Below are positions 26,769-61,051 of a stretch of 61,427 bases of DNA, in pieces. Positions within the stretch are counted from its first letter, which is position 1; every line of letters starts with the position of its first letter. Position numbers and translations under genes: made by a program. The DNA comes from Octopus bimaculoides (taxonomy: Eukaryota): the NCBI RefSeq assembly GCF_001194135.2, contig NC_068985.1:4627498-4688924 (forward strand), in the 5' to 3' direction. Below the pieces are notes generated by a model. That model ran no database searches, was not told the DNA's origin, and was given only the letters and a program-made list of their open reading frames with translations.

Positions 26769-27042
26769 TCAAATGTCTACTTCCATCTCGTTTCCTGCTT
26801 CTGCTACTGCATCTCTTAATATTTTATCTATTTTTGCTACTTCTGCTGCTTCTGCTGCTGCTGCTACTTTTGCTGCTTTTTCTGCTTCTTCTGCTGCTTT
26901 TCTGTCTTCCTTGTTATATATATTTGTGTAAAAATCTCGAAGATAGAAGTGCATTTTCCCAACAGGGCATCTCTCGTCCATGCGATCTTGAAAAGTATAC
27001 CTCAGCTCTTTATCCATATATTCTGGCTTGAAAGGTCGGTCT
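26769..27042 (-). CDS. Gene 2 terminal coding exon (DRPFKPEYMDKELRYTFQDRMDERCPVGKMHFYLRDFY...KAAEEAEKAAK...EMEVDI*)
   Basis: CATTTCAG acceptor at 27043; phase 2 matches the previous exon. TGA ends at 26769, with ATTAAA about 30 nt downstream as a possible poly(A) signal. Confidence 0.75.
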
Positions 27043-27420
27043 CTGAAATGTGCAATGATAATTAGATTTTCAATGATAATTAGATTTTAAACAACAACAG
27101 TAAAAGAGGACGGTGGACAATAACAACAACAACAACAACTACATCTCTCCAAGAGCAGAAGTCTATGGCAGCTGCTGTGCTTGTTTCCAGGGCATCAACA
27201 GTGGCAGTTTCAAGAATAAGTAGAATGGAAACATAAAAGTGTCTCATCTATTGTACCACAACCACCAGAGACCGACCACGGTCAAGAATCAGGAGGAGAG
27301 TGGAGGATCCACCTCCAGCACAGAAATGGTTACAAGCGGCAGTTCCATTCTTACTATCTTGAACTGATTCAGAAAGCTAGAATAGGTTGGGGAAATATTA
27401 AGAGAAAAAGCAGAGTGCGG

Positions 27421-27451
<31 letters not shown>

Positions 27452-28044
27452 GCCCAGATAAAAGACAAACAAACCAGAAGTCTCCCAGGAAGAGGTGCCA
27501 ACCTTTATAGAGTGTCTTACTTTTCTAGCGATCTGAAAGGCAAACTGCAGCCTACCTAGTCTAATGCTGATCCTAAACGAGAAACAACTACAAAGAAGAT
27601 GAAAANNNNNNNNNNNNNNNNNNNNNNNNNNNNNNNNNNNNNNNNNNNNNNNNNNNNNNNNNNNNNNNNNNNNNNNNNNNNNNNNNNNNNNNNNNNNNNN
27701 NNNNNGAGAGAGAGAGAGAGAGAGAGAGATAAATATAGTGAGAGAGAGAAAGAGAGACCCTCACAATTATTTGATTGACCCCTCTCTACAAAAATACATC
27801 CTATTCCAAATGTAATAGAGTTGACAAAAGATTTGAACTTTTATATTGGAACTCTGTTTTTTCTTTCATGTCGTCCACATACAAAATGACATCATTAATA
27901 CTTTTCATGTCATACCCGCAAGAAAAAAAAACTGCAAAATATACAAAACACACACAAAAAAAAAAATAAAGAATGCCATTTGAATTGCAGTACAAAATAT
28001 TAACAGTGAAAACAATTGTTTTCAGCTTGGAAAACAGACATTAA

Positions 28045-28265
28045 CCCTTTAGTGTTCACATTATTCTGCCAAAATTAATGCTTTTTCATCCACATTGTTT
28101 TGAACTAATCATGCATTATCTTATAGCTATGAGATTTTGATGAGGTAGCTGTTAATTTTCAAAATGATATTGTAGGGTTGGTGTGAGAGACCAGATTTGG
28201 CCAGTTTGAACATAAAACAAGCAGAATACTTTTGGCCAGATATGGCCGGCTTAAATGCTAAAGGG
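28045..28265. mobile_element. piggyBac-type MITE, second family, 221 bp
   Basis: TTAA|CCCTTTAG...CTAAAGGG|TTAA. Degenerate copies near 8370-8577 and 59080-59310. Confidence 0.8.
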
Positions 28266-28587
28266 TTAAACAATAATGATTAGCGTGAATATATCCTGTG
28301 GAAATGTGAATGAAAACAACTTTAGTAGACATGAATCTATCACATCAAACATAAATACGAATAACAAAATACTACTCTAGAATAACATTTGAATAATGCA
28401 CTCTTAATGATTAAAAAATAAATGTCCAACCATACCCGTTGTTGACTCCAATTTCTTCAATTATCTATTCACATGCAAATGCAAACCTGGAAGTACGTAT
28501 AATACTACTACTGGATAGCCCAGGGTGAAATCTGAGGGTGGATGACCTTTATACTGTACTCTACTACGTTCTTAACAGAACATACCA

Positions 28588-28622
<35 letters not shown>

Positions 28623-29124
28623 GCACAACTGGGGAACTCACCTAATTTCCTTCTCCAGACATCCCCACTATCATTTCTCTAATTGCAGTATTTTGTTGTT
28701 GTAAAAGAATGTAAGTAACCAAGCAGTTCCACTTATAGCAAGAAACCCATTCCATTCTGGACCTTCTTCATACTTTGAGCTCCCACCCCACCCCACCCCA
28801 CCACATCAGTGAGCATAACGCCACCCTCCTCTTCTGTAACCCCACTCATTGAAGGGGTGCTTGGTCTTACATCTAATCTACCTACTTAGCTTGGTTTATA
28901 TGACTTATGTTTAATATAAACACTTTAGGGTTACTCCATTCACACTACAGTGGTAAGAAATTCTCAAGAGAGCCGAACAGCAGAAGGTCTTTAGAAATGA
29001 TCCCTGCCCTTGCCTTAGGCAAATGTTTTGGCCCTTTACTTTTTAGATTCTAAGGAGACCTGGTTGTATTCAGATTGTGAATCCTGTGTACCCTTCTGCA
29101 AGTTTCCAATCACACCACTTAATA

Positions 29125-29997
29125 CATGGAGCGTCCCGAAAGTCACTGATGGTTTTCAATTTTTAATAACTCCCTCAACTTTACAAATAAATGCAAGAAA
29201 TTTTGATACAACATAAAGGACATAATGGAAATTAATATACACAAGTCAAATGTTGCAACACCATTACCTCACATATGAAAAATGACATTGCTTAAATGGT
29301 AGCCATTTTCGGCTTTGTATGTCCATGCTCTTTCCAAAACTTGCACCATAACACCCTCAAGAGTTTCAGACTCCACTTCTGATTTCTCTATTAATGTTCT
29401 CCTTCAGTTATACCAGGATCTCTAGTTTGCTGATGTAAATCCTCTCTTTCAGGTATCCCAACAAGAAAAAATTTGGGCTGGTCAAGTCTAGGGAATGTGA
29501 AGGCCAGTTGACATTGCCGTAGTGGGAGATTATTCTCTCTCCAAAGCACTGCCATAGCAACTGCATTGTTTCTCTTGCAGTATGGGCAGTTACCCCATCT
29601 TGCTGGAACCATGTGTGAGGTCTACTTTGAATGGTTAGGTGTAAAAAGGGCCTCAACCATGGTTCTGTACCATTCTCCAGTCACTGTGACAACATTTTCA
29701 TCATCTGGAGTAACTGAACAAGAGCATCAATAGAGAAATCAGAGAAGTGGGGTTGGAAACTCTTGAGGGTGTTACGGTGCAAGTTTTGGAAAGAGCATGG
29801 ATGTGTGAAGCTGAAAATGGCTGCCCATTTTAACAATGTCATTTTTCTTATGTCATGTAGTGGTGTTGCAAAATTTGACTTATGCATATTAATTTCCATT
29901 ATGTCTTCTATATTGTATCAAAATTTCATGCATTTATTTGTAAAGTTAAGGGAGTTATTAAAAATTGAACCCCATCAGTGACTTTTGGGACACCCTG
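29125..29997 (-). mobile_element. Internally deleted Tc1/mariner-superfamily element (DD37D/maT-like) with long TIRs
   Basis: TA on both flanks and TIRs of about 200 bp (CAGGGTGTCCC-like ends). Transposase remnant WFQQDGVTAHTARETM...NWPSHSLDLTSPNFFLLGYLKERIY. Confidence 0.85.
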
Positions 29998-30262
29998 TAT
30001 ATAACTCAAAAATATAAAAACCAACAAGCAAGTAGCAATGTGCTCATGCAACCTACTAGAAATAGCAGCCAAATATTTGCGACCTAAAGAAAGGAAAGAC
30101 ACACTGGATAATGAGGGCCTAGACGGAAAAAAAAAACAAAAAGAAAATAAGAGTCCAAATAACATGAGGAGCGGAAGATATTGTAATGGCTGACTACTCA
30201 GCATTGACCTTGGGTTAAATAAGAAGAACATTAAAAAAAAAATGTGAAAATGAATAACATAC

Positions 30263-30351
30263 CCTCTCAAGGCTTTTCTAAGGTTAACCAGCCAATCATA
30301 TTTAAACATTCCACCGTCAAAGAGGACACCGTTTTTATAAAGTATCAGATC
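30263..30351 (-). CDS. Gene 2 exon, 89 nt (DLILYKNGVLFDGGMFKYDWLVNLRKALR); first half of a SEP-like domain
   Basis: TTTTTGCAG acceptor and GG|GTATGT donor. LxLYKNG...DxG...Y...L...RG resembles the recalled SEP domains of p47 (LKLWKSGFSLDNG) and UBXN11 (LKLYRNG). Confidence 0.8.
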
Positions 30352-32906: not shown

Positions 32907-32967
32907 CAAATCAACAGGAACACATTCAATTCCTAAGTGATTTTCAACCAATTCATCTGTTCTTGTT
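32907..32967 (-). CDS. Gene 2 exon, 61 nt (TRTDELVENHLGIECVPVDL)
   Basis: TTTTTTCATTCCAG acceptor and TTG|GTTTGT donor. Phase 2 to 0. Confidence 0.75.
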
Positions 32968-33899
32968 CTGGAATGAAAAAATTACACAAGATTTCACAGT
33001 TGCAAATGTAAAGTATTTCCAATGATTGTATATAACCTATATTTTCTTTTTTTACTCTTTTACTCTTTTACTCGCTTCAGTCAGCCAACTGCAGCCATGC
33101 TGGAGCACCGCCTTTTAGTTGAACAAATCGACCACAAGACTTTATTATCTGTAAGCCTAGTACTTATTCTATCAGTCTCCCCTGCCAAACTGCTAAGTTA
33201 CAGGGATGTAAACACACCAAAAATGGGTTGTGAAGCGATGGTGGGGGGACAAACATATACATATATTGGGTCATCCCATAAATAATGCGGTTTTTTCAAT
33301 TACATGAACTAAAAGTCAGAGGGGACAGGATAAACTACCTGCATCAACTTGCTATAAAAGCAGGTAGTAATTTTACTGGTCAATATAAAGATCCTCACCC
33401 AGGAACAAAAAAAAAAAAAAAATNNNNNNNNNNNNNNNNNNNNNNNNNNNNNNNNNNNNNNNNNNNNNNNNNNNNNNNNNNAAAAAAAAAAAAAAAAAAA
33501 ATTAACCAGCCTGGGTGGGTGGTGCTAGCAAGTATGTGCAAAACGAATATGAAAACAAAAATGTGTGCTGATGACCCTCGGGGGTGGGGAGGCGACTTTT
33601 GGAAAATTCACAAGATCCGATTTTTCTGTCGTAACTTCTGGTAAAATGGATATATATTGATTTTTTTTTTAATGGAATCCCACGTTTTTGGTTATGGAGG
33701 ATTGAATTCTGAAAAAAAAATTTTCAAAATTTCAATCCCTCCCACCATTACTTTTCACTTTTACCGGAAATTTTTTTTTTTAATTTGAAATTAAAATTTG
33801 AATTTGTGTTTATTTTTTCCATATTCTTAATCTCCATGTTTCCATGCAGACTGATGGAAAAAAAAAATTCTAAAAAACCACTTTAATTTCACATGAATT

Positions 33900-35793: not shown

Positions 35794-35842
<49 letters not shown>

Positions 35843-35847
35843 CTTAC

Positions 35848-35960
35848 TCATGTCTTCCTTCAATTAATTCAGTTGTTACATTATTTTTGCCCTTCAGAAG
35901 AGTCACGTCATTCTTTTTGGTATCATTACGTGGAATATCAGCAACGATATTCTCAATTTC
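35848..35960 (-). CDS. Gene 2 exon, 113 nt (EIENIVADIPRNDTKKNDVTLLKGKNNVTTELIEGRH)
   Basis: TTTTTTCCAG acceptor and GA|GTAAGT donor. Phase 0 to 2, no stops. Confidence 0.8.
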
Positions 35961-38092: not shown

Positions 38093-38138
38093 CTTGATTA
38101 ATAAATCTACTTGCAGGAAATACTTATCCAGTTTAAAC
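38093..38138 (-). CDS. Gene 2 exon, 46 nt (FKLDKYFLQVDLLIK)
   Basis: TTTTGTTTTACAG acceptor and AAG|GTTTGT donor. Phase 2 to 0. Confidence 0.75.
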
Positions 38139-38441: not shown

Positions 38442-38480
<39 letters not shown>

Positions 38481-39193: not shown

Positions 39194-39203
39194 NNNNNNN
39201 NNN

Positions 39204-40326: not shown

Positions 40327-42337
40327 NNNNNNNNNNNNNNNNNNNNNNNNNNNNNNNNNNNNNNNNNNNNNNNNNNNNNNNNNNNNNNNNNNNNNNNNNN
40401 NNNNNNNNNNNNNNNNNNNNNNNNNNNNNNNNNNNNNNNNNNNNNNNNNNNNNNNNNNNNNNNNNNNNNNNNNNNNNNNNNNNNNNNNNNNNNNNNNNNN
40501 NNNNNNNNNNNNNNNNNNNNNNNNNNNNNNNNNNNNNNNNNNNNNNNNNNNNNNNNNNNNNNNNNNNNNNNNNNNNNNNNNNNNNNNNNNNNNNNNNNNN
40601 NNNNNNNNNNNNNNNNNNNNNNNNNNNNNNNNNNNNNNNNNNNNNNNNNNNNNNNNNNNNNNNNNNNNNNNNNNNNNNNNNNNNNNNNNNNNNNNNNNNN
40701 NNNNNNNNNNNNNNNNNNNNNNNNNNNNNNNNNNNNNNNNNNNNNNNNNNNNNNNNNNNNNNNNNNNNNNNNNNNNNNNNNNNNNNNNNNNNNNNNNNNN
40801 NNNNNNNNNNNNNNNNNNNNNNNNNNNNNNNNNNNNNNNNNNNNNNNNNNNNNNNNNNNNNNNNNNNNNNNNNNNNNNNNNNNNNNNNNNNNNNNNNNNN
40901 NNNNNNNNNNNNNNNNNNNNNNNNNNNNNNNNNNNNNNNNNNNNNNNNNNNNNNNNNNNNNNNNNNNNNNNNNNNNNNNNNNNNNNNNNNNNNNNNNNNN
41001 NNNNNNNNNNNNNNNNNNNNNNNNNNNNNNNNNNNNNNNNNNNNNNNNNNNNNNNNNNNNNNNNNNNNNNNNNNNNNNNNNNNNNNNNNNNNNNNNNNNN
41101 NNNNNNNNNNNNNNNNNNNNNNNNNNNNNNNNNNNNNNNNNNNNNNNNNNNNNNNNNNNNNNNNNNNNNNNNNNNNNNNNNNNNNNNNNNNNNNNNNNNN
41201 NNNNNNNNNNNNNNNNNNNNNNNNNNNNNNNNNNNNNNNNAATAAACCACTGTTGTCCTTGTAAGTTGTTTTTCATGTTTACTATGGATTGCTTGAAGCT
41301 AACTTTCTTCCTACACCTCGATCTTCGGATCTTACATTTATAAATACATATATATAAGTGTGAGAAAGAGAAAGAATTTTATGTAATGACAAGTTTATTT
41401 AGCAAGAGAATCAGAAAGGAAGAGGTTTGTCAATGTTGTACAGTGTGAGGACCAAAGGCACGGGGTATTCTGGATTGCAAGGCAATGTATCAGAGAAAAT
41501 CGTGATGCTTTGGGAGAGAAGTATGTATGCATGGATAATGGTATGTTTGCACTTACTGACTCTGTAAAGAAGGAGCCGTGGCAATGAAAGGTTGTTAAAC
41601 ATGAAGAATGATTGGGAGAAAGACGGACCAGCTATCCTAGTAAATAGTACAGAAAAGAGTCAAATGCTAAACTGGTGTAGCAGTGGTATAGTAAGTTGTT
41701 CCAAGGATAAAGGAGATATCTGACAGAGGCATCATATTGTTGGACCAAATCATGAAAGTTGCAGAAAAAATTACAGCTCAATTAATTATCTGTATAATCA
41801 TCATCCTCATTTAATGTCTGTTGTCTATGCTGGCATGGGTTGGACGGTTTGACTGGCGGCTGGCAAGCTGGAAGGCTACACCAGACTCCAGTCTGATTTC
41901 GCATGGTTTCTATAGCCGGATGCTCTTCCTAATGCCAACCACTCTGAGAGAGTAATGGGTGCTTCTACATGCCACCAGCATGGGTGTCATTTGTGTAAGA
42001 CTGGTATCTGCCACAACAGTGATTTTCCTCAGCTTGATGGGTCTTCTTCTCAAGTACGACATAATGTCAGTCATTGCTTCTGTGAGGCCCAACATTTAAG
42101 CCAGAGGTCTCAGTCATTGCCTCCGTGAGACACAACACTCAAAATGAGCTCAGCCACTTTGCCCCCATGATGCCCAATGCTTGAAAGGTGCCTTAAAGGT
42201 CTCAGTCATTGCCTTCATGAGGCCCATATCTGCCATGACTGTGATTTTGCTTGGCATGATGGGTTTTTGTCTCAAGCACAACATAATGCCAAAGGTCTTG
42301 TTCATTGCCTCTGAGGTAATATATATATATATATATC

Positions 42338-43558: not shown

Positions 43559-43602
43559 TCTTGATGCCTTGCCCTGATGGCTGCAAGTTTTTCCATTGTA
43601 GG
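43559..43602 (-). CDS. Gene 2 exon, 44 nt (PTMEKLAAIRARHQ)
   Basis: CTTTCTTTTTCAG acceptor and GA|GTATGT donor. Phase 0 to 2. Confidence 0.75.
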
Positions 43603-45442
43603 CTGAAAAAGAAAGATGAAACAATATTTAAAATTTAAAAATAAAAAGACAAAATATTCACTTTTAAACAAAATTCAATTCAACTCATCAAAAATTTTAA
43701 AGGTTAACATTTATTTCAAAATTCATATTTAATAAAATTTCAGCAAATTTACATTTTTCATTCTTTTGATTTTCTTTCTTTTTTTTTTTTGTTTAGAATC
43801 CAGGTGTGGAAGCAAAAGCTGGAACAAAGGCCTTGGAATTAACTAAGGAAAGACTAAAGTTTCAGCTAACAGCAAAGCAGATAGGATTCTACTCCCTTCA
43901 GGTAAATGGTTCTGCTTGATATGTAGGAAAACTGTAGGTAGGAATTCCATACATTGTACCCAGTGAAAAGTTATGGACACACAAGAGATGCAGCGGAATC
44001 AAAGGATAGTTAATGGAAAAAGTAGTATTAGTAAGAGGAAAATGCACAGGAGCAACAAACACTAAGGATACACTGGAAATAAATTTTCTGAAACACCTTG
44101 GAGGCTCCCTAGAAGAAGTAGATAGTTTCTGTTACCTAACTGACCTAATTAGTAGTGGCGGAGGATATCAGTGATTCTCAACTATTTTTTTGCCCTTGGA
44201 TGCCTTTGGTTCCTATTTTACTCACTGGACCTCCATAGCCATTTGATATATATATATATATATATCGTCATGGCACCTGTGCCCAGCATCGCCTCCCTGG
44301 CACTTGTGCTAGATAGCATATGTAAAGACATTTGAGCGAGATCGTTGCCAGTGCTGCCGAACTGGCTCCTGTGCAGGTGGCATGTAAAAAACACCATTTC
44401 GAGCGTGGTCGTTGCCAGTACCGCCTGACTGGCCTTCGTGCCGGTGGCATGTAAAAGCACCCACTACACTCTCAGAGTGGTTGGTGTTAGGAAGGGCATC
44501 CAGCTGTAGAAACTCTGCCAAATCAGATTGGAGCCTGGTGTAGCCATCTGGTTTCACCAGTCCTCAGTCAAATCGTCCAACCCATGCCAGCATGGAAAGC
44601 GGATGTTAAACGACGATGATGATAATGATGATGATATATAAATATCTCACTGTATTTTTATTATTAAATATTATCAGGAACTGTCACCATCATCATTTAA
44701 CGAATGTTATCCATAGTGGTAAGATGCCAGTCTGATTTGGCATGGGTTCTACAGCTAGATTCCTTTCCTAAAGCCAACCACTTCGAAAGTGTAACAGGTG
44801 CTTTTTAAGCCAGAAGCATGTAAAATAGCAATTTATTGCACATAAATTTTAACAAGAAAATCTGATATGGACTGCCAAGGGCCATATGGACTCTGGTTGA
44901 GATCCACCGGTTAATATATTAATTAAAAGAAAAATTTGTAAGTAAACCAAAAGAAGAAGAGAGGTAGTGGTCATTACTTTTGCAAGCCGTGTTGAAATAA
45001 TGCAAACATAAACATCTGCCTGTTTATGTCTGGAGAAAATCACAGGCAGGGAAGGAAGAGGAGGCCTGATTGAATGCTTGTGATACAAGAAAAAAAAAAA
45101 AAAAAACCCTCTGCTAAAGACACTCTAGGATTGCAGGTGTTAAATTAAGATGAAGTTAAGCCTACTACTAATATAACAATTATCAATTTACTATAGAAGT
45201 TAGCCAAGATTTTAGGAAAAATTAATTACCATAGAGTATTTGAATCAAAATTAAACTAAAATTTAGACCAAAGTAGTTAAGTCTGATCCTAGATATTTAT
45301 AGAACCTAGTATAGCTTAATTGAGACAAAATCAAACATGAATTTATTAAACAGACCCAAAGCAATTTGTCTTCTTCAGCTCTATAAACGTGTATTAGCGT
45401 CCCATAGTCCAAACCAGTCCAAATGCTAAGATAGCGAATCAC

Positions 45443-45461
45443 CTGACGGATATCTAATTTT
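45443..45461 (-). CDS. Gene 2 microexon, 19 nt (KLDIRQ)
   Basis: TTCTTTTATTTATTTCAG acceptor and CAG|GTGATT donor. Supplies the phase 2 to 0 link needed between 47462 and 43602. Confidence 0.55.
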
Positions 45462-47461: not shown

Positions 47462-47526
47462 TCAAATTTTTGTCTTTCCATGATGCTAGGGAGCTTTTCT
47501 ACGCCCCTCTCAAATTCTTCATATTC
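47462..47526 (-). CDS. Gene 2 exon B2, 65 nt (EYEEFERGVEKLPSIMERQKF)
   Basis: CATTTCTAG acceptor and GA|GTAAGT donor. Only the phase-0 frame is open. Confidence 0.75.
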
Positions 47527-47784
47527 CTAGAAATGTTTACAAAGAAGGCATTTATTGTGACTTTATAACAAAAGTAATGGATTTCACACCTATAATTCCA
47601 TTTTAATTTGCACATTGACTGTTCAATGAAACTGGACATTTGTTATTTTTATCTTTTAATCTAAGACTCATGAAAAGGGGAGAGGAAAATATTCTCAAGT
47701 GCAAATCTTGTCTCAGGTATGGCTGTGTAATAAGAAATTTGCTTCCAAACCACATGGTTCTGGGTTCAGTTCCTCTTTGTGACA

Positions 47785-49305
47785 CCTCCAGCCCATCAGG
47801 AATCACCGCTAAGATGTTTAAAATATCTGGCAGTGTGGGAAATTGTTTAGTCACCTGTATTGTAAATAACATGGTTCATGAAGGAGTCATACCCAATGAT
47901 TGGTGTAGCAGTACCATACTAAACTGTTACAAACGTAAAGGTGATGCTTTAGATAGAAATAATTACAGAGGTATCAAATTGTTGGATCAGGTGATGAAAG
48001 TTACAGAGAGACTTAGTCTAGATGAGATGCAGTTTGGTTTTGTACGAGGTAGAAGCACCACTGATGCTATATTTCTGGTAAGGTAACCTGTCCAAAGAAA
48101 AATCTCTGTAGCTGGCGTTTGTTGACATAGAGAAAGCTTTTGACAGGGTCCCCTGATCCCTTATCTGGTGTCAATGCGGAAACTAGGGATAGACAAGTCG
48201 TTGATGAGAGCCGCAGAAGCCTTGTACAGGGACACTATCAGCAAGGTGAGGGTGGGCAATGAGTACAGCAAAGAATTCAGCGTACAAGTAGGGGTTCACT
48301 AAGGATCAGTACTCCCCTCTTGTTCATCATAGTCATCCGGGCAATAACAGAGGAATTCAAGACACAAAGGTGCAGCAACATCAGAGGAAGGTTAACAGGG
48401 AGACTAATTTTGTATGTGAAAGGTGCACAGGTACAATAAATGCTAAAAATGCACAGAAAATAGACTCCATCAACTGCTTCCATTATCTAGGAGGCCAAGT
48501 TAGTAGTGGAGGTGGATGTTCCAAGAGCGTAGCTGTGAGAATAAGATTAGGCTGGGTAAAGTTCAGAGAGCTCCTACTCCTGCTGGCAACAAAGGGCCTC
48601 TCTCTCAGAGTGAAATGGAGATCGTTTGATGCCTGTGTGCAAACAGCTATGCTGCATGGCAGTGAAACATGGGCTGTGATAGCTGAGGACATGCGTAGGG
48701 TTGGCAGAAATGAAGCCAGTACACTTTGCTGGATGTGCAATGCCAGTGTGCATGTTCGACAGAGTGTAAGCATCTTGAGAGGAAACTGGCATAAGAGGAA
48801 CTAGATGTGGTGTGCACAGAGAGACAACTGCATTGGTCATGTGATGTATATGTATAAGGGTAGCTGTGTAAAGAAGTACTGATCTCTAAATGTGGAGAGA
48901 ACCTGCGGTAGAGGAAGACAGGGGACAAGGTGCTGAGGCATGATCTTCAAACTCTGAGCTTCACTAGTGACTGAAGCCTATGGCAATGTGCTGTGCTTGA
49001 GAGGACTCATCAAGCCATGTGAAATTGTAGTTGTCATCAATGCTGGTGTCATGTAACTGGCATGCAAAAAGCACCTTTTGAGTGTTGGGCCTCACAGGGG
49101 CAAAGTGGCTGACTGATGCTGGTGGCATGTGAAAAGTACCTAGTACACTCTCAGAGTGGTTGGCATTAGGAAGGGCATCCAGCCGTAGAAACAATGCCAA
49201 ATCACACTGGGGTCTAGTGCAGCTTTTCAGCTTGTCAGCCCTGGTCAAACTGTCAAACCCATGCCAGCATGGACAATGGATGTTAGATGATGATGATGAT
49301 GATAT
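47785..49305 (+). mobile_element. RTE-like LINE, degraded RT with 3' tail
   Basis: IPNDWCSSTILNCYKRKGDALDRNNYRGIKLL, QFGFVRGRSTTDAIF, MLHGSETWAV. Frameshifted. Confidence 0.85.
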
Positions 49306-49801: not shown

Positions 49802-50999
49802 NNNNNNNNNNNNNNNNNNNNNNNNNNNNNNNNNNNNNNNNNNNNNNNNNNNNNNNNNNNNNNNNNNNNNNNNNNNNNNNNNNNNNNNNNNNNNNNNNNN
49901 NNNNNNNNNNNNNNNNNNNNNNNNNNNNNNNNNNNNNNNNNNNNNNNNNNNNNNNNNNNNNNNNNNNNNNNNNNNNNNNNNNNNNNNNNNNNNNNNNNNN
50001 NNNNNNNNNNNNNNNNNNNNNNNNNNNNNNNNNNNNNNNNNNNNNNNNNNNNNNNNNNNNNNNNNNNNNNNNNNNNNNNNNNNNNNNNNNNNNNNNNNNN
50101 NNNNNNNNNNNNNNNNNNNNNNNNNNNNNNNNNNNNNNNNNNNNNNNNNNNNNNNNNNNNNNNNNNNNNNNNNNNNNNNNNNNNNNNNNNNNNNNNNNNN
50201 NNNNNNNNNNNNNNNNNNNNNNNNNNNNNNNNNNNNNNNNNNNNNNNNNNNNNNNNNNNNNNNNNNNNNNNNNNNNNNNNNNNNNNNNNNNNNNNNNNNN
50301 NNNNNNNNNNNNNNNNNNNNNNNNNNNNNNNNNNNNNNNNNNNNNNNNNNNNNNNNNNNNNNNNNNNNNNNNNNNNNNNNNNNNNNNNNNNNNNNNNNNN
50401 NNNNNNNNNNNNNNNNNNNNNNNNNNNNNNNNNNNNNNNNNNNNNNNNNNNNNNNNNNNNNNNNATATATGTATATACATACATACATACAAATATATAC
50501 ACACACACACACATACAAATATACACATGTGTCTTTGTCTGTGATTGTGCCCCACCACTGTTTGACAACCAGTGTTGGTGTGTTTACATCCCTGTAACTT
50601 AGCAGTTTGGCAAAAGAGACCAATAGAACAAGTAAGTACTGAGGTTGATTCACTCAACTAAAGCTTTTTAAAGGAGGTGCCCCAGAGACATTGCAAAGCA
50701 TTCCATCTGGTGTCTTTTTATTTTTGGCTTGTTTCAGTTATAGGAGTGTGGCCATTCTGGAGCACTGCCTTGGAGGGTTTAATCAAACAAATTGACCCCA
50801 GAACTTCAGCCACCAATAGAGTGACCAGGACTTGGGCTGGTGATTCATTCACTGAGCATGAATAGATGAAAATATACTGGTATATGAGGCCAGAGCATAG
50901 AGAGCTAGAACAAATACTGCAAGACATTTTAGACAACACTCTAATAACCAGTCAATTTGCTATCTTATACAATATATAAATATATAAAATTCAACTAAC

Positions 51000-51033
51000 C
51001 TCGTTGTATGCAAAATAACTTTTCGCTAGTTCT
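51000..51033 (-). CDS. Gene 2 exon A2, 34 nt (ELAKSYFAYNE)
   Basis: TTTCCTTTGCAG acceptor and GAG|GTTAGT donor. Phase 2 to 0. Confidence 0.75.
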
Positions 51034-52872: not shown

Positions 52873-52899
52873 ATAGTATCCGTCTTTTGTCCTTTCAAT

Positions 52900-54360
52900 C
52901 TTATCTCATAGACAAACACTTTTGCAAAACTAGCTCACCTTTACAAGTAAAAGAAGGTGATGGTGTGATCTTCAATATGGACTCACATTATAGACAGATT
53001 GTCCTAAGCAGCATAACAGTTGTTGAATGAGCATTACTGACATCCAGAGTAGCAGGCATTTCAAGAAGGCTCAAACATTCAACACATGTATGCAGAATGG
53101 TTTTATTTCTCTCTCTATCTTATTGTAATTATTATGGCCAGGTTCCAACCCAAGCTGCAGCAACAAAGTCCATCCTGCACACTTGTCAGTCCATCATCGT
53201 TGCCTCTAGGTCCTGGATATGTTTCAAGCCGGTATCTGCAATCAAGTTGTCAATGTAAGTGTGTGATGACGTTTTCCTCTTCTTACATCATGATGAAGTG
53301 GGTTCCACACACTAATTTAGATGCTTCCAGTTCAGCATGTTGCGTGCAGTGACCAGACAGTTGCAGCTGTCTTTGCTTGATCTCCTTGCAAACTTTTAGC
53401 AAGTCTCCATAAAGGCATTTCTTTGTCATACGTTGCTGCCATTTCAGACTTAGGGCCATTTGTAGTATCCTTGTGTAGCACCCATTTAGCCAATTTGACA
53501 ATTTCTTTGTCAGCATCCATGTTTCACTGCAATATAAAAGCACTGATTCAACAGTTGCAATGAACAGCTTGATTTTGGCAGACCCTCTTTAGTTTGCAAC
53601 AGGCTGTCCATGCTTGTGCCTTCCTGATCCTGATGTCTGCATCTTGGATAATCCAAGTTGATGGTACTTCTCCGTTTGTAGAGTATATCTCAACCAGCCA
53701 TTGTCCCACCTTGATAGCACAGGGGAGCCTAGGATTTTTGGAAATTGTTCACAGTCCCCAAGAGAGAAGTTTTCTGGGATACAGCTGCTAGTTCACTCTC
53801 ATTAGTACTCAGAGCTTTTTCAAGAATGTCTTTCCTACTACTATTCCTCTATAAATAACATGGAAATTTCACGAAGTGCATAGCCCAACTAGGAGAGGTC
53901 TATGGGTGATGGGCTACATTCCAGATGCCAGATGCCCATAGGTCTCCATTTGATCCAGAACAGCAGTTCTGATAAACAATTGAGCTGTGTGAAGACATAC
54001 TTCACAGAAAGCGCCAGACCATCTCTGTAGGTGCTGCAAGATCCAGTCACAGTATACTGAAACCTTAGCATGGAAGGTGATGGCAGCAGATCGACTGCCT
54101 GACCTGTAGAAAAACATCCCAAGAAACAAAGGAATGTCATGTGAGAACTGTGCAGTAAGGTATTTTGCTGCATGTCATTTACTAGGGAACCAGTATTAGA
54201 GAACGAACGAAAGAATATTTAAAATTACAGTTCTATAAATTCCTGAAATTCTCATTCAAGTCAATCAACTGAGTTAGTTCTGTGTTGCTCTGTACATTGG
54301 TCATTCCTTGGATGGTTCCAGCAACATATCAGTTTTTCTATAAAAAGAGGTTAGTAACCC
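52900..54360 (-). mobile_element. RTE-X-like LINE remnant
   Basis: LLYCSETWMLTKKLSNWLNGCYTRILQMAL...LYGDL.KV...I.QRQLQLSGHC. Confidence 0.65.
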
Positions 54361-54589
54361 TTTTCTTCAACTTTTAACCACCACTGCTGCTACCACCACC
54401 TGTCTGTTCCAGTCTGTTTTGGCTTGGTTTCTACAGCTGGACACCCCTCCTAATGCCAATGACTCCACAGAGTGTACCAGGTGCCTTTTATGTGTCACCA
54501 GCACTGGTCATGCCTATGATTTCATTTAGTATGATGTAACTTCTCAAGCACAGCAAATTGCCAAAAGTCACAATCATTTGACACTGTCT

Positions 54590-56135
54590 CTGTGAAACTC
54601 AACAACCAAAGATCATATTTCACCACCTCATCCCATGTCTTCCTGGGTCTACCTCTTCCACAGTTAGTGAACTGTGCTTATTTATGCATCTGTCCTCATT
54701 CATATGCAACACATAGCAATACCAGTGCAGTCTTCTCTCTTGCACACTACATCTGATGCCTCCTATACCCAATTTTTCTCTCAAGACACTCACACTCTGA
54801 CATTATCCATTCAGCAGAGCATGCTAGTTTCATTTCTTTCAAGCCTTTGCAAATCCTCTGCAATCACAGCCCGTTTCACTGCCATGTAGCATGGCTGTTC
54901 ACACACAGGCATCATACAATCTGCCATTCACTCTGAGGGGAGAGACCCTTTGTTATCAACAAAGGCAGAAGTTCTCTCAACTTCACCCAACCCATTCTTA
55001 TTCTAGCAGCTATGCTCTCAGAGCATCCTCCTCCTCCACTGCTGACTTGGTTATCGAGGTAACAGAAGCTATCTACTACTTCTAAATACATCCTCGGAAA
55101 GTTAATGAAGTCAATTCTTTGTACATTCCTAGTGTTTATTGTGTCTACACATCTGCAACACACAGAGACTACTTTCTCTATTAACCTTCCTCCGATACAG
55201 CTACATTTCTTATGTATCCATGCTTGCACTGGGTACATGTTATGGAGCTTCTACCTACACTTTTTCTGCATATTGAGCAAGGCCATCTCCTTGAAGGGCT
55301 TGTGATTTGTCTGTTCAATTTACTAAGACTTTGGTCTTAGCAAAATTACCTCTAAGGCCCTTATCTTCCAGATCTGGCTTCCACAGCTGGAATTTTTCTC
55401 TAGTTCTGATAGTAATTCAACTATAAGAACAAGGTCATTAGCATAGAAGAGCTCCCAAGGGCAGCCCATCTTAAGTTCTTCTGTTATGGCCTGGAGGACT
55501 ATAATGATCAAGAAGTGAGTTGAGAACTGATCCCTGGTGAACTCCTACCTGTACACTGAATTCATAGCTAAGGACGGTGGACATTAAATGATGATGATGA
55601 CTCATTGCCAAATTTCCTGTTACTGGCAGCATCCTTGTACGACTCACCAACCACTCATCAATTCCTAGCTTCCACATTAACCATCAGATAAGGGAGCAGG
55701 GAACACTGTCAAAGTCTTTCTCCATGTCAACAAGAGTCAGGTACAGAATTTTACCAGAAATATAGCATCAGTAGTGCTCCTCCCTGGCACAAAACCAAAC
55801 TGTATCTCATTTAGACTCACTTCCGAGTTAGTTTAGCTATGATATTCTCTGTAACTTACATTGCCTGGTCTAACAATTTGAAAGTTCTGAAATTATTTCT
55901 GTCTAAGGCATCACCGTTACCATTGTAGCAGTTGATTGTCATGCTGTTACAGCAACTATTGAGTATGACTCCCCCATGGACAACCTGATTAACTAGACAG
56001 GTGACTAGACCATTTCCCACTTTGCCAGATATATTAAGCATCTCAGTGGTGACACCTGATGAGCCAGGGGCTTTCCTTGTCTTCATATCCTTCATAGCTT
56101 TATCTACCAAGCTGCTATCTATTTGGATAGCTGCT
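54590..56135 (-). mobile_element. RTE-like LINE, degraded RT
   Basis: KAPGSSGVTTEML, QVGVHQGSVL, ELFYANDLVL, EVVDSFCYL. Same family as 47.8-49.3 kb; further fragments at about 20100-20290, 22330-22800, 41420-41770, 42910-43390 and 43800-44165. Confidence 0.8.
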
Positions 56136-56585
56136 CTCATTTTTATCAATTTTAATAGTGACATTTCCAAGCCTTCAAATTCATAAAACCCAGCTTTCAA
56201 ATTAAAATTGGTGGAGTTCCTCCAACATTTCATGTAAATTTGAATTTCAGTATAATTTAAAACATTATTCAATTCAATTTTTTCTTTTTATCCCACTTGA
56301 CCATTTCAATCTGTGAAAATATCTTATTTTAACATTTTAAATTTCAAATGCAAAGAAACTGTGAAGTAAAATTGAGCTTGGACTGAAAATTTCTTCCTTT
56401 ATCTCTGTATGCACTTGGGCCTTATATCTTTAATCTTGTAGTTAAATATAAATATTAAAAAAAATGTAATAAAAACTAGATGAACAGGATTCTGCATATC
56501 TGCTTATGTCATCATATTCATGGATTGTAGTCTTGCATCGAATTACAAATAAAATTCAAATTAAAGATGTCATAAAATTACTTAC

Positions 56586-56650
56586 GTGATCTGTGAACTT
56601 CGAATAATTTCTGGCAAGCTTTGAATTTTGCTCTCCAAGAAGCAATATTC
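56586..56650 (-). CDS. Gene 2 exon B1, 65 nt (EYCFLESKIQSLPEIIRSSQI)
   Basis: CATTTCTAG acceptor and CAC|GTAAGT donor. Paralogous to 47462-47526, whose only open frame fixes the phase as 0 to 2. Confidence 0.75.
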
Positions 56651-59600
56651 CTAGAAATGTTCACAAATAAAGAATTTGTAGTGACAGCCTCATAAAATTG
56701 AGAACATTATATCTATAGTTTTTAGCTGGCATATGACTCGTCTATGAAACTAAACATTATCTGACTTAGAGAAACACTTCTGTTGTTTTGTTTCTTGATG
56801 TCCACAGTAGCATCAAGTGTGGCATACTTTTATTCTTTTACTTGTTTCAGTCATCTGACTGTGGCCATGCTGAAGCACCGCCTTAAAGCGATTTTTAGTA
56901 AAAGAAATCGACCCCAGGACTTATTGGTCTCTTTTCCTGAACTGCTAAGTTATGGGGACATAGACACACCAGCATCGGTTATCAAGCAATGGCCGGGCAA
57001 AAAACACAGGCATAGTGCTGCCTGACTGGTCCCGTGCTAGTGGCATGTAAAAAGCACCACTTGAGCATGGTTATTGCCAGTGCTGCCTGACTGGCTCCTG
57101 TGCCAGTGGCAAGTAAAAAGCACCATTCAAGTGTGGTCGATGCCAGTACCATTTGACTGACCCTCGTGCCAGTGGCACATAAAAAGCACCCACTACACTC
57201 TCAGAGTGGTTTGTGTTAGGAAGGGCATCCAGCTGTAGAAACCTTGCCAGATCAGATTGGAGCCTGGTACAGCCATCTGACTTGCCAGTCCTCAGTCAAA
57301 CTGTCCAACCCATGCCAGTATGGAAAAGGGACGTTAAATGACGATGACGACAACGATTATGATGATGATGATGATAATAATATATATATATATATACACA
57401 TATATCTGTAATATAATATGTGACAGTCATTCGGTTGCCATAATAAAACTCTGAGTTTTGGATGTTGGGACAGAAATCTGCTCCGGCATCTCGTCAGTTA
57501 TTAAGAGAAACAAAAATGCTATGATTTTCATAGCATTTTTGCTTGTCATGCCATGCAATGGGACTGAACCCAGAACCATGTGATTGAGAAGCAAGCATCT
57601 TACCACACAACCACGCCTGCGCCTATGATGTATGATTCAAAACAAGACTGGGAAGGAATATAAAAATAATTCCAGAACATATTATTTCAAACAACTCTAT
57701 GGCTTACTAAAACTGACACAATGATTTCTAATACAGCTATGTAATCACAAACATTGTAGGTGTGACATAATCTACATATTTGTCCCTAGTATCTCACTTG
57801 TATTTATTCTATGAACCTTGGGAGGATGAAAGGCAAAAGGATGCCTGTGGCTTTGAAAGAAGACTTCGATGGGTTGTAACAAACTACTGTAAGGATATGT
57901 ATCAAGAATTGTTCTGATTTTGTTACCCACTTCCTAAAAAGGAGCCTCAGACCAGTCACTTGCTTTATTAGAAGTGACAGCAAAATCTCCTCAAAATTTC
58001 CTCGAGAATAAAAAAAAAGAATGTTGGATGTATTGAAATTTGTAGCATCTAGATTAGTGGTTTCGGTGGAAATAAGGATACAGAATGGTTACAGCTTCAA
58101 CAATACTGAGCCTAAGGTCAATATTAGAACTGACCTGGAAGTAAACAATAAACAAAACCAGAAAATTGAATACAAATCCAATACAAGAAACAAAGGCTTT
58201 CTCCTTCATTAGTTTCAATATCAAAGCTGTAGTGAGTACTGCTACCAACACATCTTCTACAACTTTACTTGTGTTATCAAGCTTCAATAAATGGAATGCT
58301 ACACTGAACTCACTGGCATTTCAATTCAGAAATTGTAAACATTAAACTAGTATATCAAAATCTTGTAGACCATCAAGTCTCTTCCTCTTAATGCTGCACC
58401 AAATTACCAATATTCAAAAGAGGTGTAGAATTCCAAGACAACGTAGGGAAGCAAAATATGTTTGGCAAATGAAATAAATCTAATCTCTAGTCCCTAACAG
58501 AGAAGGACCCTCACAGAAGGCAGCATATAATCATTCCATTTGCTTAATTATAGCAACCAAATTGTCATCAACTATCATCTTTCAAATGGCATCAGCTTAT
58601 ATGAAGTTCTTCAATTTCAGACAATGATCCAAAAGAAAGACAATACTTTTATGATTTTTTTATAAGTTTGTTAGATGAGGCAAGTTAGTTTCCATGGCAT
58701 TTTGGTAGCCCTGCCTCAGACTTGTAAGAATTTCAGTGTAGGATGTTTAACCTGAATAACTGAAGGTAAACAATAATCGGTGGAGAGGAACAGCTGATTT
58801 GGTCCAAATGCATGAAAGTGAGGGAATTCTCAGTAAAGTCACCCAGGAACCAATCTTTTAAATATTTTGGTTTAAAACAAGAGAAATCTCAGTCATGACA
58901 TCTCTAGTTAAAAGCATGCCAGAAAGAACAGGTGACTTAGATGAAACTGCACCTTATTACATAATGTGATGCCACAGGTAGGCTAATGATATTGTTTACC
59001 TTATTTCTTAAATGAATTATAAGTCTTTAGAAAAACCTTCAGAGATGACAGAATGTCGAAGGTTTTTGCAGGTTTATTGTTAACCATTTAACAGATTATC
59101 CAGTCAAATGCAATGCTTAATTATCTATATTGTTTTGAATTAATCATGCATTATCTCATATATTTGAGACCTTCAATGGTATGACAGTACATTTTTAAAA
59201 TGACATTGTAGGTTAGGTGTAAAAGGTAACAGGTCATTGGTTTTGAACATAAGACAGGTAGGATATTTGGGCTGGATATAGCCAGTTTAAATGCTATGCT
59301 AAAGGGTTAAACATGTATTTGTAGGAACTTTTACGAGCATTAGGGAATTAAAAGCATTAAATTTTATTACAAATGAGAGCACACACAACAGTCAGGTAAG
59401 AAGTTAGTTTCCAAACCAGATGGTTCTGGGCTCAGACCCAATATGTGACACATTCTACTATAGCCTGGGGCCAACCAAAGCCTTGTTAATTGTGGCATGT
59501 AGAAACTGAAAGAAGCCCATTATATACGCATGTGTATGTGTGTGTGTCTATGTCTGCGCTTGAAAAGCAGTGTTGGTGTGTTTACATCCTTGTAACTTAG

Positions 59601-61017
59601 CAGTTTGGCAAAACAGACCGATACAATGAGTAACAAAAAAATTACTCATGTGAATTCATTCAACTAAAAATTCTCCAGGGCGGTGTCCCAGCATTGTTGC
59701 AATCTAATGAGTGAAGCAAGTAAATGATAAAAGAGAAAGGTGCATTGAAGGGCTCTGCCTGCATGAAATGGAACAAAAGAGAGATAAAAACCTCTGGGGT
59801 TAAGATGCTGGTATGTTTCAGTTCATATTACTAAAGTATCTATAACATTATTTCTACAGCAACACAGACAGAAGCAAAGTAGAGAGAAATACTTTGCCTC
59901 ACCAAAGAAAAACAAATACAGACTAAATACCTGGCTGGTTTTGATCCCATGACCCAATAGTTTATTCCTACAACCATAGCATTTCTGCAGGTGTATCTAT
60001 TTCAGCAGTTTATAATTAAATAATACCAGATTTAATAACAAATTAGTTATTTTAAGAATTTTAGTAATTGTTTAGCCCCAGGCCAGTCCTGATCCAGTAG
60101 ACCTATTATCCCAAAAGAACGTTTCTTATGACTAAACCCAAAAAGGACACTTTTGCAGGACCTCCATCAATGGTAGGAAAAGGTGAGGATGAAACCATCA
60201 CTTGTTTGGTATCATCAGACCATTTATCTCAAGTGAATGCTTACTACAGAAGGAATTCCACTGAACGCATCAAAAGTACAGCTGATGGTATTAGAATGGA
60301 GTAGGGATCAAATCTAACACCAAAGAACAAGTAAAGTTTATGCAAGAGAGCTTTCTAAGAGCTTGCTGCTACCAAATTTCATACACGACATTTGGCTTGA
60401 CCCCACCAGATTAGGGGTTGAATATTGAGATTGAAGCTGGAATCACATACTTGCTAAGTAAACTTTTTAATGCATATCAATGCTTGTGCCTGCTTTGTGG
60501 GTGTGAAAGTGGATGGCTGTATTTTAAATGGAAGTGGCCATGGATGGCTGGCAAAGATATTCAATTTGAAACTATATGGTTCCTGATTCAATCCCAATGC
60601 ACAGCACCTTGGGCAAGTGTGTTCTACCACAGTAATTGTTTGACCAATTCCTTGTGAATAAAATTTGGTAGATGGAAACTGTGTAGAAGACCAGCTGTTG
60701 CATGTACATTGAAGCCTCCCTCTGTCTACAGCACAATGTTATCTAAGGAAAAGACAAAGGCCAATACAGTTTCACAGTATGGCTGTGAGAAGGGAAAGGG
60801 CAGGATGAGATATCACAAGGCATCCAATCAAGTGTTTTAACAATCCTAGACTGCTATTATTATTATTACCAAATTCAAAAAGGGAAAGGTACAATTAACT
60901 GCATTGATATTTGAACTCAGAATGTAGACAACCAAGACAAATATCGCAAAGCCTTCTACCAGATGCCTGAATCTCTCCACCAACATATTGGATTGTAAAT
61001 AAATCATATCAACTAAC

Positions 61018-61051
61018 CTCACGCTCTTTAAAGAGACTCGCTGCATATCTT
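61018..61051 (-). CDS. Gene 2 exon A1, 34 nt (RYAASLFKERE)
   Basis: TTTCTTTTGCAG acceptor and GAG|GTTAGT donor. Same length, phase (2 to 0) and donor context as exon 51000-51033. Confidence 0.7.

What the first reader, a model, noticed from the sequence alone, without database searches (positions are those of the whole stretch)
26769..61051. Cryptic 11-exon gene encoding a divergent SEP-like protein with no UBX domain
Seen: 11 small minus-strand exons with canonical splice sites chain in phase into a 280-aa open frame: ...RYAASLFKEREEYCFLESKIQSLPEIIRSSQITELAKSYFAYNEEYEEFERGVEKLPSIMERQKFEKLDIRQPTMEKLAAIRARHQEFKLDKYFLQVDLLIKEIENIV...GIECVPVDLDLILYKNGVLFDGGMFKYDWLVNLRKALRGDRPFKPEYMDKELRYTFQDRMDERCP...AAEEAEKAAK...EMEVDI*. 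Knowledge: LxLW/YKxG..DxG..Y...L..I.RG..P...V....ED..DE is the SEP-domain pattern of p47/NSFL1C, UBXN2A/B, UBXN11 and yeast Shp1, which are p97/VCP adaptors where SEP is normally followed by a UBX domain. Inference: this is a fast-evolving, possibly lineage-specific SEP protein that has lost UBX and ends in an Ala/Glu/Lys-rich helix, so it could act as a non-canonical or dominant-negative p97-adaptor relative. The SEP assignment is by eye.
Basis: partly seen in the sequence, partly recalled or inferred. Interest (0 to 1): 0.8.

Follow-up and report, generated by a model that had tools for sequence, protein, structure and literature searches.

The report
Octopod giant gene tail, SEP-like domain
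The 11 exons are real, but they are only the last 34 kb of a roughly 2,000-residue, octopus-lineage-only gene whose C-terminal end carries a very divergent SEP-like domain with none of the known motifs for binding the p97 ATPase.

Summary
Observation: confirmed almost completely. Eleven minus-strand exons (61051 to 26769) all have AG/GT sites and chain in frame. All five N gaps lie in introns. Ten exons match the ortholog-supported model. One donor was misplaced: the "KLDIRQ" micro-exon reads on for 29 conserved residues, giving 309 aa rather than 280.

It is not a small cryptic gene. The window is Octopus bimaculoides. NCBI already models exons D to J as uncharacterized LOC128247888 (250 aa). 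The O. sinensis and O. vulgaris orthologs are 1,935 and 2,076 aa, and the O. sinensis gene spans 310 kb. They contain p47-type UBA-like domains, 17-19 copies of a 66-aa repeat, the module seen here, and an Ala/Glu/Lys tail. Exons A to D are the last repeat copy. An exhaustive search found relatives only in Octopus and Argonauta.

SEP call: partly supported. Pfam SEP, a PDB profile search and AlphaFold/Foldseek gave nothing. Profile-profile comparison gave 90-94% probability over the SEP core, far above shuffled controls.

No family member has a UBX domain or a SHP, VIM or VBM motif. It therefore fails the definition of a SEP-type p97 adaptor, and the dominant-negative idea is untested. I rate it a moderately interesting new variant.

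The parts
61018..61051 (-). Exon A, 34 nt. It starts in mid-codon and encodes RYAASLFKERE, the first half-unit of the last 66-aa repeat. It has an AG acceptor and no ATG, so the gene continues beyond the window end.
56586..56650 (-). Exon B, 65 nt, encoding EYCFLESKIQSLPEIIRSSQI(T). It is a repeat exon with the signature flanks aacatttctag| and |gtaagtaat.
51000..51033 (-). Exon C, 34 nt, encoding ELAKSYFAYNE. It is a duplicate of the exon A type.
47462..47526 (-). Exon D, 65 nt, encoding EYEEFERGVEKLPSIMERQKF(E). It is a duplicate of the exon B type. The NCBI model P0001 starts at its internal Met.
45356..45461 (-). Exon E1, 106 nt, encoding KLDIRQVIRYLSIWTGLDYGTLIHVYRAEEDKLLW. It is a possible remnant of a UBA-like domain.
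43559..43602 (-). Exon E2, 44 nt, encoding PTMEKLAAIRARHQ(E). Linker.
38093..38138 (-). Exon F, 46 nt, encoding FKLDKYFLQVDLLIK. Linker.
35848..35960 (-). Exon G, 113 nt, encoding EIENIVADIPRNDTKKNDVTLLKGKNNVTTELIEGRH(E). Linker.
32907..32967 (-). Exon H, 61 nt, encoding TRTDELVENHLGIECVPVDL. Its last residues begin the SEP-like domain.
30263..30351 (-). Exon I, 89 nt, encoding DLILYKNGVLFDGGMFKYDWLVNLRKALR(G). It aligns to the N-terminal part of the SEP core, from the LKLWKSG strand of p47 through FLESIRRG.
26769..27042 (-). Exon J, the last exon. It holds the rest of the SEP-like domain (DRPFKPEYMDKELRYTFQDRMDERCP...), then the 48-aa Ala/Glu/Lys tail encoded by (GCA/GAA)n-like DNA (26835-26904), then EMEVDI and TGA (26769-26771).

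Best explanation
The window holds the last 11 exons of a giant, fast-evolving gene found only in octopods. The orthologs are 1,935 and 2,076 aa, and the O. sinensis gene spans 310 kb.

The full-length protein, N- to C-terminus, is:
- several UBA-like domains of the same Pfam families as the N-terminal domain of p47;
- 17-19 copies of a 66-aa, probably helical, repeat, each half-unit encoded by a 34-nt plus 65-nt exon pair;
- a probable UBA-like remnant;
- a linker of about 80 aa;
- a strongly diverged SEP-like domain;
- a low-complexity Ala/Glu/Lys tail whose length varies between species.

Shown:
- the exon structure;
- orthology and restriction to octopods;
- the UBA_4/UBA_8 hits in the full-length orthologs;
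- the profile-profile match to SEP;
- the absence of UBX, SHP, VIM and VBM motifs.

Inferred:
- The gene descends from a p47/Shp1-type ancestor (UBA-SEP-SHP-UBX). It lost the p97-docking module and gained the repeat array.
- The protein acts as a large scaffold. Its UBA-like domains would bind ubiquitin or ubiquitin-like partners. Its SEP-like domain would act as a client-binding or self-association surface, as SEP does in p37, p47 and Shp1. It would not be tethered to p97 by any known motif.
For: Exon chain and identity to P0001.

Orthologs:
- O. sinensis P0002, 1,935 aa. The query matches its residues 1438-1683 at E 1.5e-114; the name comes and the 310-kb gene span.
- O. vulgaris P0068, 2,076 aa.
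- Argonauta hians P0003, 30% identity with the same exon pattern.

Domains in the full-length protein:
- UBA_4 scores 33.8 bits (cut-off 21.8) and UBA_8 scores 29.3 bits (cut-off 26) in P0002.
- p47 itself scores on UBA_4, UBA_8, SEP and UBX.

Repeats: 17 copies in O. sinensis and 19 in O. vulgaris. Window exons A to D match the repeat profile at 64 bits.

SEP:
- hhalign of the octopod profile against six SEP sequences gave Prob 94.1, E 1.3e-7, 62 columns.
- 400 column shuffles had mean 11, sd 2.4, max 22.7; the reversed alignment scored 13.1.
- Leave-one-out runs gave Prob 89.9-94.1.
- Octopus alone and Argonauta alone align in the same register, at Prob 49 and 34.
- The best BLASTP segment against p47 also falls on the start of SEP.

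Conservation: the SEP-like and E1 segments are the best-conserved parts. SEP-like is 62/72 against O. sinensis and 23/70 against Argonauta.

The role of SEP as a client-binding element comes from the review PMC9941556.
Against: - The Pfam SEP model gives no hit at E<=10 for any octopod sequence.
- An HMMER profile of the domain finds no SEP chain in the PDB.
- With only database- or PDB-derived SEP sequences (p47 twice, Shp1, one p37-like fragment), hhalign gives score 20.2 and Prob 8. That still exceeds 150 shuffles (max 15.4).
- The diverse SEP alignment relies on four sequences I recalled from memory and checked only by their Pfam SEP scores (63-101 bits). The recalled p47 and Shp1 sequences were confirmed against the PDB.
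- The AlphaFold models have pLDDT 40 and 43, and the Foldseek hits are meaningless.
- No expression data were available.
- The N-terminal 85% of the O. bimaculoides gene lies outside the window and did not appear as a protein in the database.
- All functional statements are inference.
Confidence: 0.7

Rival explanations
1. The SEP resemblance is chance or convergence. On this reading the C-terminal domain is a new octopod-specific fold, and only the N-terminal UBA-like domains tie the protein to ubiquitin biology.
For: There is no Pfam SEP hit and no PDB hit with the domain profile. The SEP set drawn only from the database and PDB gives Prob 8. The structure prediction was uninformative. One of the five SEP-core columns that are invariant in my six-sequence alignment is not matched (p47 L221, which aligns to Pro).
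Against: The hhalign score is about 13 sd above column shuffles and is stable when any one sequence is left out. Both lineages independently align in the same register. The order UBA_4 then SEP is the order seen in p47. The low-confidence secondary structure (two strands, then two helices) follows the SEP order under that alignment.
Confidence: 0.2
2. One reading: a small stand-alone SEP protein that acts as a non-canonical or dominant-negative p97/VCP adaptor.
For: NCBI models a 250-aa product starting at the Met in exon D, so a short isoform from an internal promoter cannot be excluded. The SEP-like similarity also fits.
Against: Exons A to C are in frame, have canonical sites, and correspond to residues 1379-1422 of the 1,935-aa ortholog. 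Exon A has an acceptor and no start codon. No SHP, UBX, VIM or VBM motif is present. The SEP adaptor family is defined by SEP plus SHP box plus UBX (PMC9941556).
Confidence: 0.07
3. The O. bimaculoides copy is a decaying or mis-assembled remnant (pseudogene) of the gene that is intact in O. sinensis and O. vulgaris.
For: Only the C-terminal 250 aa is annotated in O. bimaculoides, and no N-terminal protein was retrieved. The tail is 48 aa against about 295 aa in O. sinensis. The locus has many assembly gaps.
Against: The window has 309 codons without a stop across 11 exons, all with intact splice sites. The SEP-like segment is 86% identical to O. sinensis. The tail length difference lies in microsatellite-like DNA, which is expected to vary.
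Confidence: 0.05

Closest known systems
p47/NSFL1C and yeast Shp1 (UBA-SEP-SHP-UBX adaptors of p97/Cdc48)
   Same: The N-terminal UBA-like domains of the full-length orthologs fall in the same Pfam families (UBA_4, UBA_8) as the N-terminal domain of p47. A SEP-like domain lies downstream of them, detectable by profile-profile alignment over the SEP core. The domain order UBA then SEP is the same.
   Different: There is no SHP box and no UBX domain. The SEP-like domain is too diverged for the Pfam model. There are four or five UBA-like copies rather than one. A repeat array of about 1,100 aa is inserted, and an Ala/Glu/Lys tail is added. The protein is about 2,000 aa against 370 aa. It is restricted to octopods.
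UBXN11, UBXN2A and p37/UBXN2B (SEP-SHP-UBX adaptors without UBA)
   Same: They share the SEP core pattern (LxLW/YKxG...DxG...Y...L...G..P). Among single sequences, UBXN2A gave the highest hhalign score (21.0).
   Different: These proteins have no ubiquitin-binding element (PMC9941556) and all carry SHP plus UBX. The octopod protein has UBA-like domains and lacks SHP and UBX. No single subfamily is clearly the closest (scores 16-21).
NCBI models LOC128247888 (O. bimaculoides), LOC115212235 (O. sinensis), the O. vulgaris 'hypothetical predicted protein', and Argonauta hians Ahia01_000159800
   Same: They are the same gene or its orthologs. P0001 is identical to window exons D to J.
   Different: All are unnamed, and the precomputed Pfam lists for the Octopus models carry no SEP. 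The O. bimaculoides and Argonauta models are truncated at the 5' end.

Membership tests
SEP-domain p97 adaptors (p47, p37, UBXN2A, UBXN11, Shp1), defined in PMC9941556 as SEP domain plus SHP box plus UBX domain | The sequence matches the curated SEP model (Pfam PF08059) at its gathering score | tested here: not met
   No SEP hit at E<=10 for P0001, P0002, P0003 or the isolated domain. The control SEP sequences scored 63-101 bits.
SEP-domain p97 adaptors (p47, p37, UBXN2A, UBXN11, Shp1) | Remote homology to the SEP core, tested by profile-profile comparison | tested here: met
   hhalign gave Prob 94.1, E 1.3e-7, 62 columns. Shuffles reached at most 22.7 against the observed 42.2. Leave-one-out runs gave Prob 89.9-94.1. 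Caveat: the low-diversity set drawn only from the database and PDB gives Prob 8.
SEP-domain p97 adaptors (p47, p37, UBXN2A, UBXN11, Shp1) | The SEP three-dimensional fold | tested here: inconclusive
   The AlphaFold models had pLDDT 40.0 and 42.8. Foldseek against the PDB gave no match at E<=0.001.
SEP-domain p97 adaptors (p47, p37, UBXN2A, UBXN11, Shp1) | A SHP box (FxGxGxxL) after the SEP domain | tested here: not met
   A regex scan found none in the window model, P0002, P0068 or P0003. The p47 control gave 2 hits. The hhalign alignment stops before the SHP columns.
SEP-domain p97 adaptors (p47, p37, UBXN2A, UBXN11, Shp1) | A C-terminal UBX domain | tested here: not met
   Pfam finds no UBX in P0001, P0002 or P0003, or in the precomputed list for P0068. 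tblastn with four UBX domains finds nothing in the window or in the Argonauta locus. The ORF ends with a stop after the tail.
SEP-domain p97 adaptors (p47, p37, UBXN2A, UBXN11, Shp1) | Physical binding to the p97/VCP N-domain | not testable with these tools
   This needs co-IP or pull-down. No VIM or VBM motif was found either.
p47/Shp1 subtype (SEP adaptor with an N-terminal UBA-like domain) | A UBA-like domain of Pfam UBA_4/UBA_8 upstream of SEP | tested here: met
   P0002 scores UBA_4 33.8 bits and UBA_8 29.3 bits, both above their cut-offs. The precomputed list for P0068 shows the same families. p47 hits the same two families. These domains lie outside the window. Inside the window, exon E1 is only suggestive: hhalign Prob 76.5 over 27 columns, and no Pfam hit.

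The most novel reading that the evidence does not exclude
Octopods evolved a p97-independent class of SEP protein. On this reading, a p47-type ancestor lost its SHP/UBX docking module and became a giant multi-UBA scaffold. That scaffold is built from about 35 frame-neutral 34+65-nt exon pairs, whose conserved intron flanks could allow regulated, combinatorial changes in repeat number.
Probability: 0.2. Interest if true: 0.6.

Novelty: new variant of a known kind. Interest (0 to 1): 0.4.

Why it matters
SEP domains are currently understood almost entirely as the client-handling part of p97/Cdc48 adaptors, and the family is defined together with its SHP box and UBX domain (PMC9941556). A SEP-like domain in a protein with no p97-docking element would be a natural experiment on what SEP does by itself. 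The protein combines it with multiple UBA-like domains and a huge repeat array.

The gene is also an example of a large, rapidly evolving gene restricted to octopods. For annotation, it shows that the O. bimaculoides model LOC128247888 and the Argonauta model are truncated at the 5' end. The practical weight is modest until expression and the fold are shown.

Tried and rejected
- AlphaFold2 on P0001 alone and on the three-sequence domain alignment gave pLDDT 40 and 43, which is unusable. Foldseek of the second model against the PDB gave only noise.
- A HMMER profile of the domain against PDB sequences found no SEP chain.
- BLASTP against p47 gave E 0.42. The hit was in the right place but was not significant.
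- A database search with the p47 SEP domain returned almost only vertebrate single-exon fragments. These were too uniform for a good profile. I therefore used recalled SEP sequences, checked them against Pfam, and confirmed p47 and Shp1 against the PDB.
- I tested whether the 66-aa repeat is a degenerate UBA-like domain. hhalign Prob was 0.6, so I rejected the idea.
- I looked for UBX or SHP exons downstream of exon J, and in the Argonauta locus, by tblastn. None were found.
- P0004, a 410-aa repeat protein from a metagenome, hit only a 30-residue stretch seven times. I treated it as spurious.
- L001, the NCBI contig around P0001, is the same assembly with the same gaps. It added nothing.
- blastn self-comparison did not detect the exon duplications because the exons are too short. 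Direct alignment did detect them.
- I considered exons B and D as mutually exclusive alternatives. I rejected this because both are present in tandem in the ortholog proteins.

Full report

I delimited the open frames and splice sites and assembled the exons programmatically.

The exons, in + coordinates, are:
- A 61018-61051
- B 56586-56650
- C 51000-51033
- D 47462-47526
- E1 45356-45461
- E2 43559-43602
- F 38093-38138
- G 35848-35960
- H 32907-32967
- I 30263-30351
- J 26769-27042, including the TGA stop

All acceptors are AG and all ten donors are GT. The phases chain into 309 codons plus a stop.

The only difference is the donor of exon E1. The 106-nt form is the one conserved in relatives (section 2).

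**The assembly gaps.** All five N runs inside the finding are intronic:
- 49802-50464 lies in intron C/D.
- 40327-41240 and 39194-39203 lie in intron E2/F.
- 33424-33481 lies in intron G/H.
- 27606-27705 lies in intron I/J.

Frame continuity therefore does not depend on the gap lengths. The O. sinensis ortholog aligns to the window exon by exon, and no residues are missing at any of those junctions. The gap-free Argonauta locus has the same series of exons. So no coding exon appears to be hidden in a gap. The public contig carrying the gene is the same assembly with the same gaps and could not resolve them further.

**2. What it is.**

The only protein found by the word-indexed search was P0001. 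This is NCBI 'uncharacterized protein LOC128247888 [Octopus bimaculoides]', 250 aa. It is identical to the window translation from the Met inside exon D to the stop. The window is therefore O. bimaculoides, and the gene is already partly annotated.

An exhaustive phmmer search of 1.84 billion cluster representatives found only two real relatives:
- P0002 is O. sinensis XP_036358878.1, 1,935 aa. The query matches its residues 1438-1683 (E 1.5e-114).
- P0003 is an Argonauta hians hypothetical protein, 283 aa, 30% identical (names).

A third hit, P0004, is a metagenomic repeat protein that matched one 30-residue stretch seven times. I treat it as spurious.

A search with the N-terminal 1,440 residues of P0002 added only the O. 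vulgaris ortholog P0068, 2,076 aa. The O. sinensis gene spans 310 kb.

**Architecture of the full-length protein.**
- Pfam finds UBA_4 (33.8 bits, cut-off 21.8) and UBA_8 (29.3 bits, cut-off 26) in the N-terminal 370 residues. By eye there are four UBA-like copies; two of the four isolated segments hit the models on their own, weakly. Human p47 hits the same two families, plus SEP and UBX.
- Next come 17 copies (O. sinensis) or 19 copies (O. vulgaris) of a roughly 66-aa repeat. Its consensus is KLAEKYFKGREGYENLLKELLDLPEIDKERAKKLAKKYFGYTKEYKDFEKEVNKYPKSI.
- Window exons A to D encode the last copy, matching the repeat profile at 64 bits.
- Each 33-aa half-unit is encoded by one 34-nt and one 65-nt exon.
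- Exon A has an acceptor, starts in mid-codon and has no ATG. The gene therefore continues upstream of the window.

After the repeats comes the module in the window. It consists of exon E1, a linker (exons E2, F, G and part of H), the SEP-like region (end of H, I, start of J), and an Ala/Glu/Lys tail.

The E1 read-through peptide...IRYLSIWTGLDYGTLIHVYRAEEDKLLW, is conserved. IWTGLDYG is invariant in Octopus and Argonauta. That settles the donor question.

Argonauta has the same exon sizes: 11/22/11/22/35/15/17/39/20/31/34 aa. It also has two further 65-nt repeat exons upstream of its annotated start. Its model is therefore truncated at the 5' end as well.

**3. Is the domain SEP?**

Negative results:
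- Pfam SEP (PF08059) gives nothing at E<=10 for P0001, P0002, P0003 or the excised domain.
- A HMMER profile of the three octopod domains finds no SEP chain in the PDB.
- BLASTP against human p47 puts its best segment on the start of SEP, but with E 0.42.
- AlphaFold2 was unusable, both single-sequence and with the three-sequence alignment (pLDDT 40.0 and 42.8). Foldseek therefore returned noise.

Positive result:
- I compared the octopod alignment A4 with a six-member SEP alignment A5 (p47, p37, UBXN2A, Shp1, UBXN11, a plant PUX).
- hhalign gave Prob 94.1%, E 1.3e-7, score 42.2, over 62 columns spanning SEP positions 2-69.
- In 400 column-shuffled controls the score had mean 11, sd 2.4 and maximum 22.7. 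The reversed alignment scored 13.1.
- Dropping any one SEP sequence leaves Prob at 89.9-94.1.
- Octopus alone and Argonauta alone each align in the same register, at Prob 49 and 34.

Caveats:
- I wrote the six SEP sequences from memory. Each scores 63-101 bits on Pfam SEP. p47 and Shp1 were confirmed against PDB chains 1SS6 and 6OPC_Z. The database search with p47 SEP also returned exact fragments.
- With only database- or PDB-derived sequences (p47 twice, Shp1, one p37-like fragment), the profile is too uniform. The score falls to 20.2 and Prob to 8, though this still exceeds 150 shuffles (maximum 15.4).

Supporting context:
- The SEP-like segment and E1 are the best-conserved parts of the C-terminal module. 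SEP-like is 62/72 against O. sinensis and 23/70 against Argonauta. E1 is 26/35 and 14/35. The repeats are 17/33 and 24/33 against O. sinensis, and the tail is 26/56.
- The order UBA-like then SEP is that of p47.
- The low-confidence secondary structure has two strands then two helices over the aligned core, with a further strand and helix after it. The core elements follow the SEP order under the hhalign register. My reference for the SEP order is my own knowledge of the p47 SEP structures.

My estimate that this is a true, highly diverged SEP homolog is about 0.75.

Exon E1 against an alignment of UBA-like domains gives hhalign Prob 76.5 and score 25.3 over 27 columns, with a shuffle maximum of 18.7. 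Pfam gives no hit. I call this suggestive only.

**4. Is it a p97 adaptor?**

[quoted passage not shown] It describes SEP as the element that contacts the client directly.

The octopod proteins have:
- no UBX domain;
- no UBX-like or SHP-like exon downstream in the window or in the Argonauta locus;
- no SHP box, VIM or VBM motif anywhere (with p47 as the positive control).

The hhalign alignment ends before the SHP columns. The ortholog models end ...EEEEMEVDA, as the window ends ...NEMEVDI.

The defining docking features were therefore tested and not met. I do not file this as a member of the SEP adaptor family. It is a SEP-like protein of p47-type ancestry. The dominant-negative idea is untested and has no positive evidence.

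**5. Most likely mechanism.**

Shown: the architecture, the lineage restriction, and the absence of docking motifs.

Inferred: this is a large scaffold. Its multiple UBA-like domains bind ubiquitin or related partners. Its helical repeat array acts as a spacer or interaction platform. Its SEP-like domain binds a client or mediates self-association, uncoupled from p97.

The tail is encoded by (GCA/GAA)n-like DNA (TRF 26835-26904). It differs greatly in length: 48 aa here, about 295 aa in O. sinensis, and none in the Argonauta model, which stops right after the SEP-like region. It looks like a rapidly expanding low-complexity appendage rather than a conserved domain.

**6. Rivals.**
- (a) The SEP similarity is spurious and the domain is a new fold: about 0.2.
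A short isoform from the exon D Met cannot be excluded.
- (c) The O. bimaculoides copy is a decaying remnant: about 0.05. This is contradicted by 309 intact codons and 11 intact splice-site pairs.

**7. Novelty and verdict.**

The gene models exist but are unnamed, and the precomputed Pfam lists for the Octopus models carry no SEP. No paper in the held library connects octopus with such a protein; the three papers that hold both terms are on other subjects.

I rate this a new variant of a known kind: a SEP-like domain outside the SEP-SHP-UBX context, in a giant repeat protein found only in octopods.

Interest is 0.4. The gene is real and somewhat unusual. However, the SEP call rests on one kind of evidence, there are no expression data, and the functional story is inference.

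Noticed in passing
window 56586-56650 and 47462-47526 (65-nt exons), 61018-61051 and 51000-51033 (34-nt exons); L002 75-139, 6381-6445, 17075-17139, 26778-26842: The repeat exons have intron flanks that are more conserved than the exons themselves. Exon B against exon D is 30/65 identical in the exon body, but 24/30 and 20/25 in the flanks. The same flank signatures (tttgtRaaYatttcYAG| ... |GTAAGTAAt for 65-nt exons; |GT[TC]AGTTGA for 34-nt exons) recur in Argonauta. Each 34+65 pair totals 99 nt, so skipping a pair keeps the reading frame. This could allow a variable repeat number through splicing.
   Followed up: partly
window 26835-26904 (minus-strand codons GCA/GAA): The Ala/Glu/Lys tail is encoded by microsatellite-like DNA. 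Its length differs greatly between species: 48 aa here, about 295 aa in O. sinensis, none in the Argonauta model. Collapse during assembly of the O. bimaculoides genome cannot be excluded.
   Followed up: partly
window 7559-7837 and 430-765, minus strand: There is a separate gene downstream on the same strand. One ORF begins MDMFNKLKTVVSNALPGNPLSRDFELL... and a second ORF encodes a kinase-domain fragment (Pfam Pkinase 20.5 bits, below the cut-off). From memory it looks like a SCY1-like (SCYL) pseudokinase. That identification is not verified.
   Followed up: partly
window 23682-24095 (+), 47640-48086 (+), 48370-48804 (+), 54912-55238 (-), 55856-56272 (-): These ORFs look like transposon debris in the introns and the intergenic region. 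One carries a PHD finger (27.8 bits) and lies next to a gap. Several others look by eye like reverse-transcriptase or endonuclease fragments, but they have no Pfam hit. A motif, LQLDALPNANHSESV, recurs in many ORFs across the window and is probably a dispersed repeat.
   Followed up: partly
Using it would remove exactly the 29-aa conserved segment. An alternative isoform lacking the UBA-like remnant is therefore conceivable.
   Followed up: no
P0002 against P0068 (outside the window): The O. vulgaris model has two more 66-aa repeat copies than the O. sinensis model (19 against 17). Otherwise the two sequences are nearly identical. The repeat number may vary between very close species, or between assemblies or annotations.
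   Followed up: no
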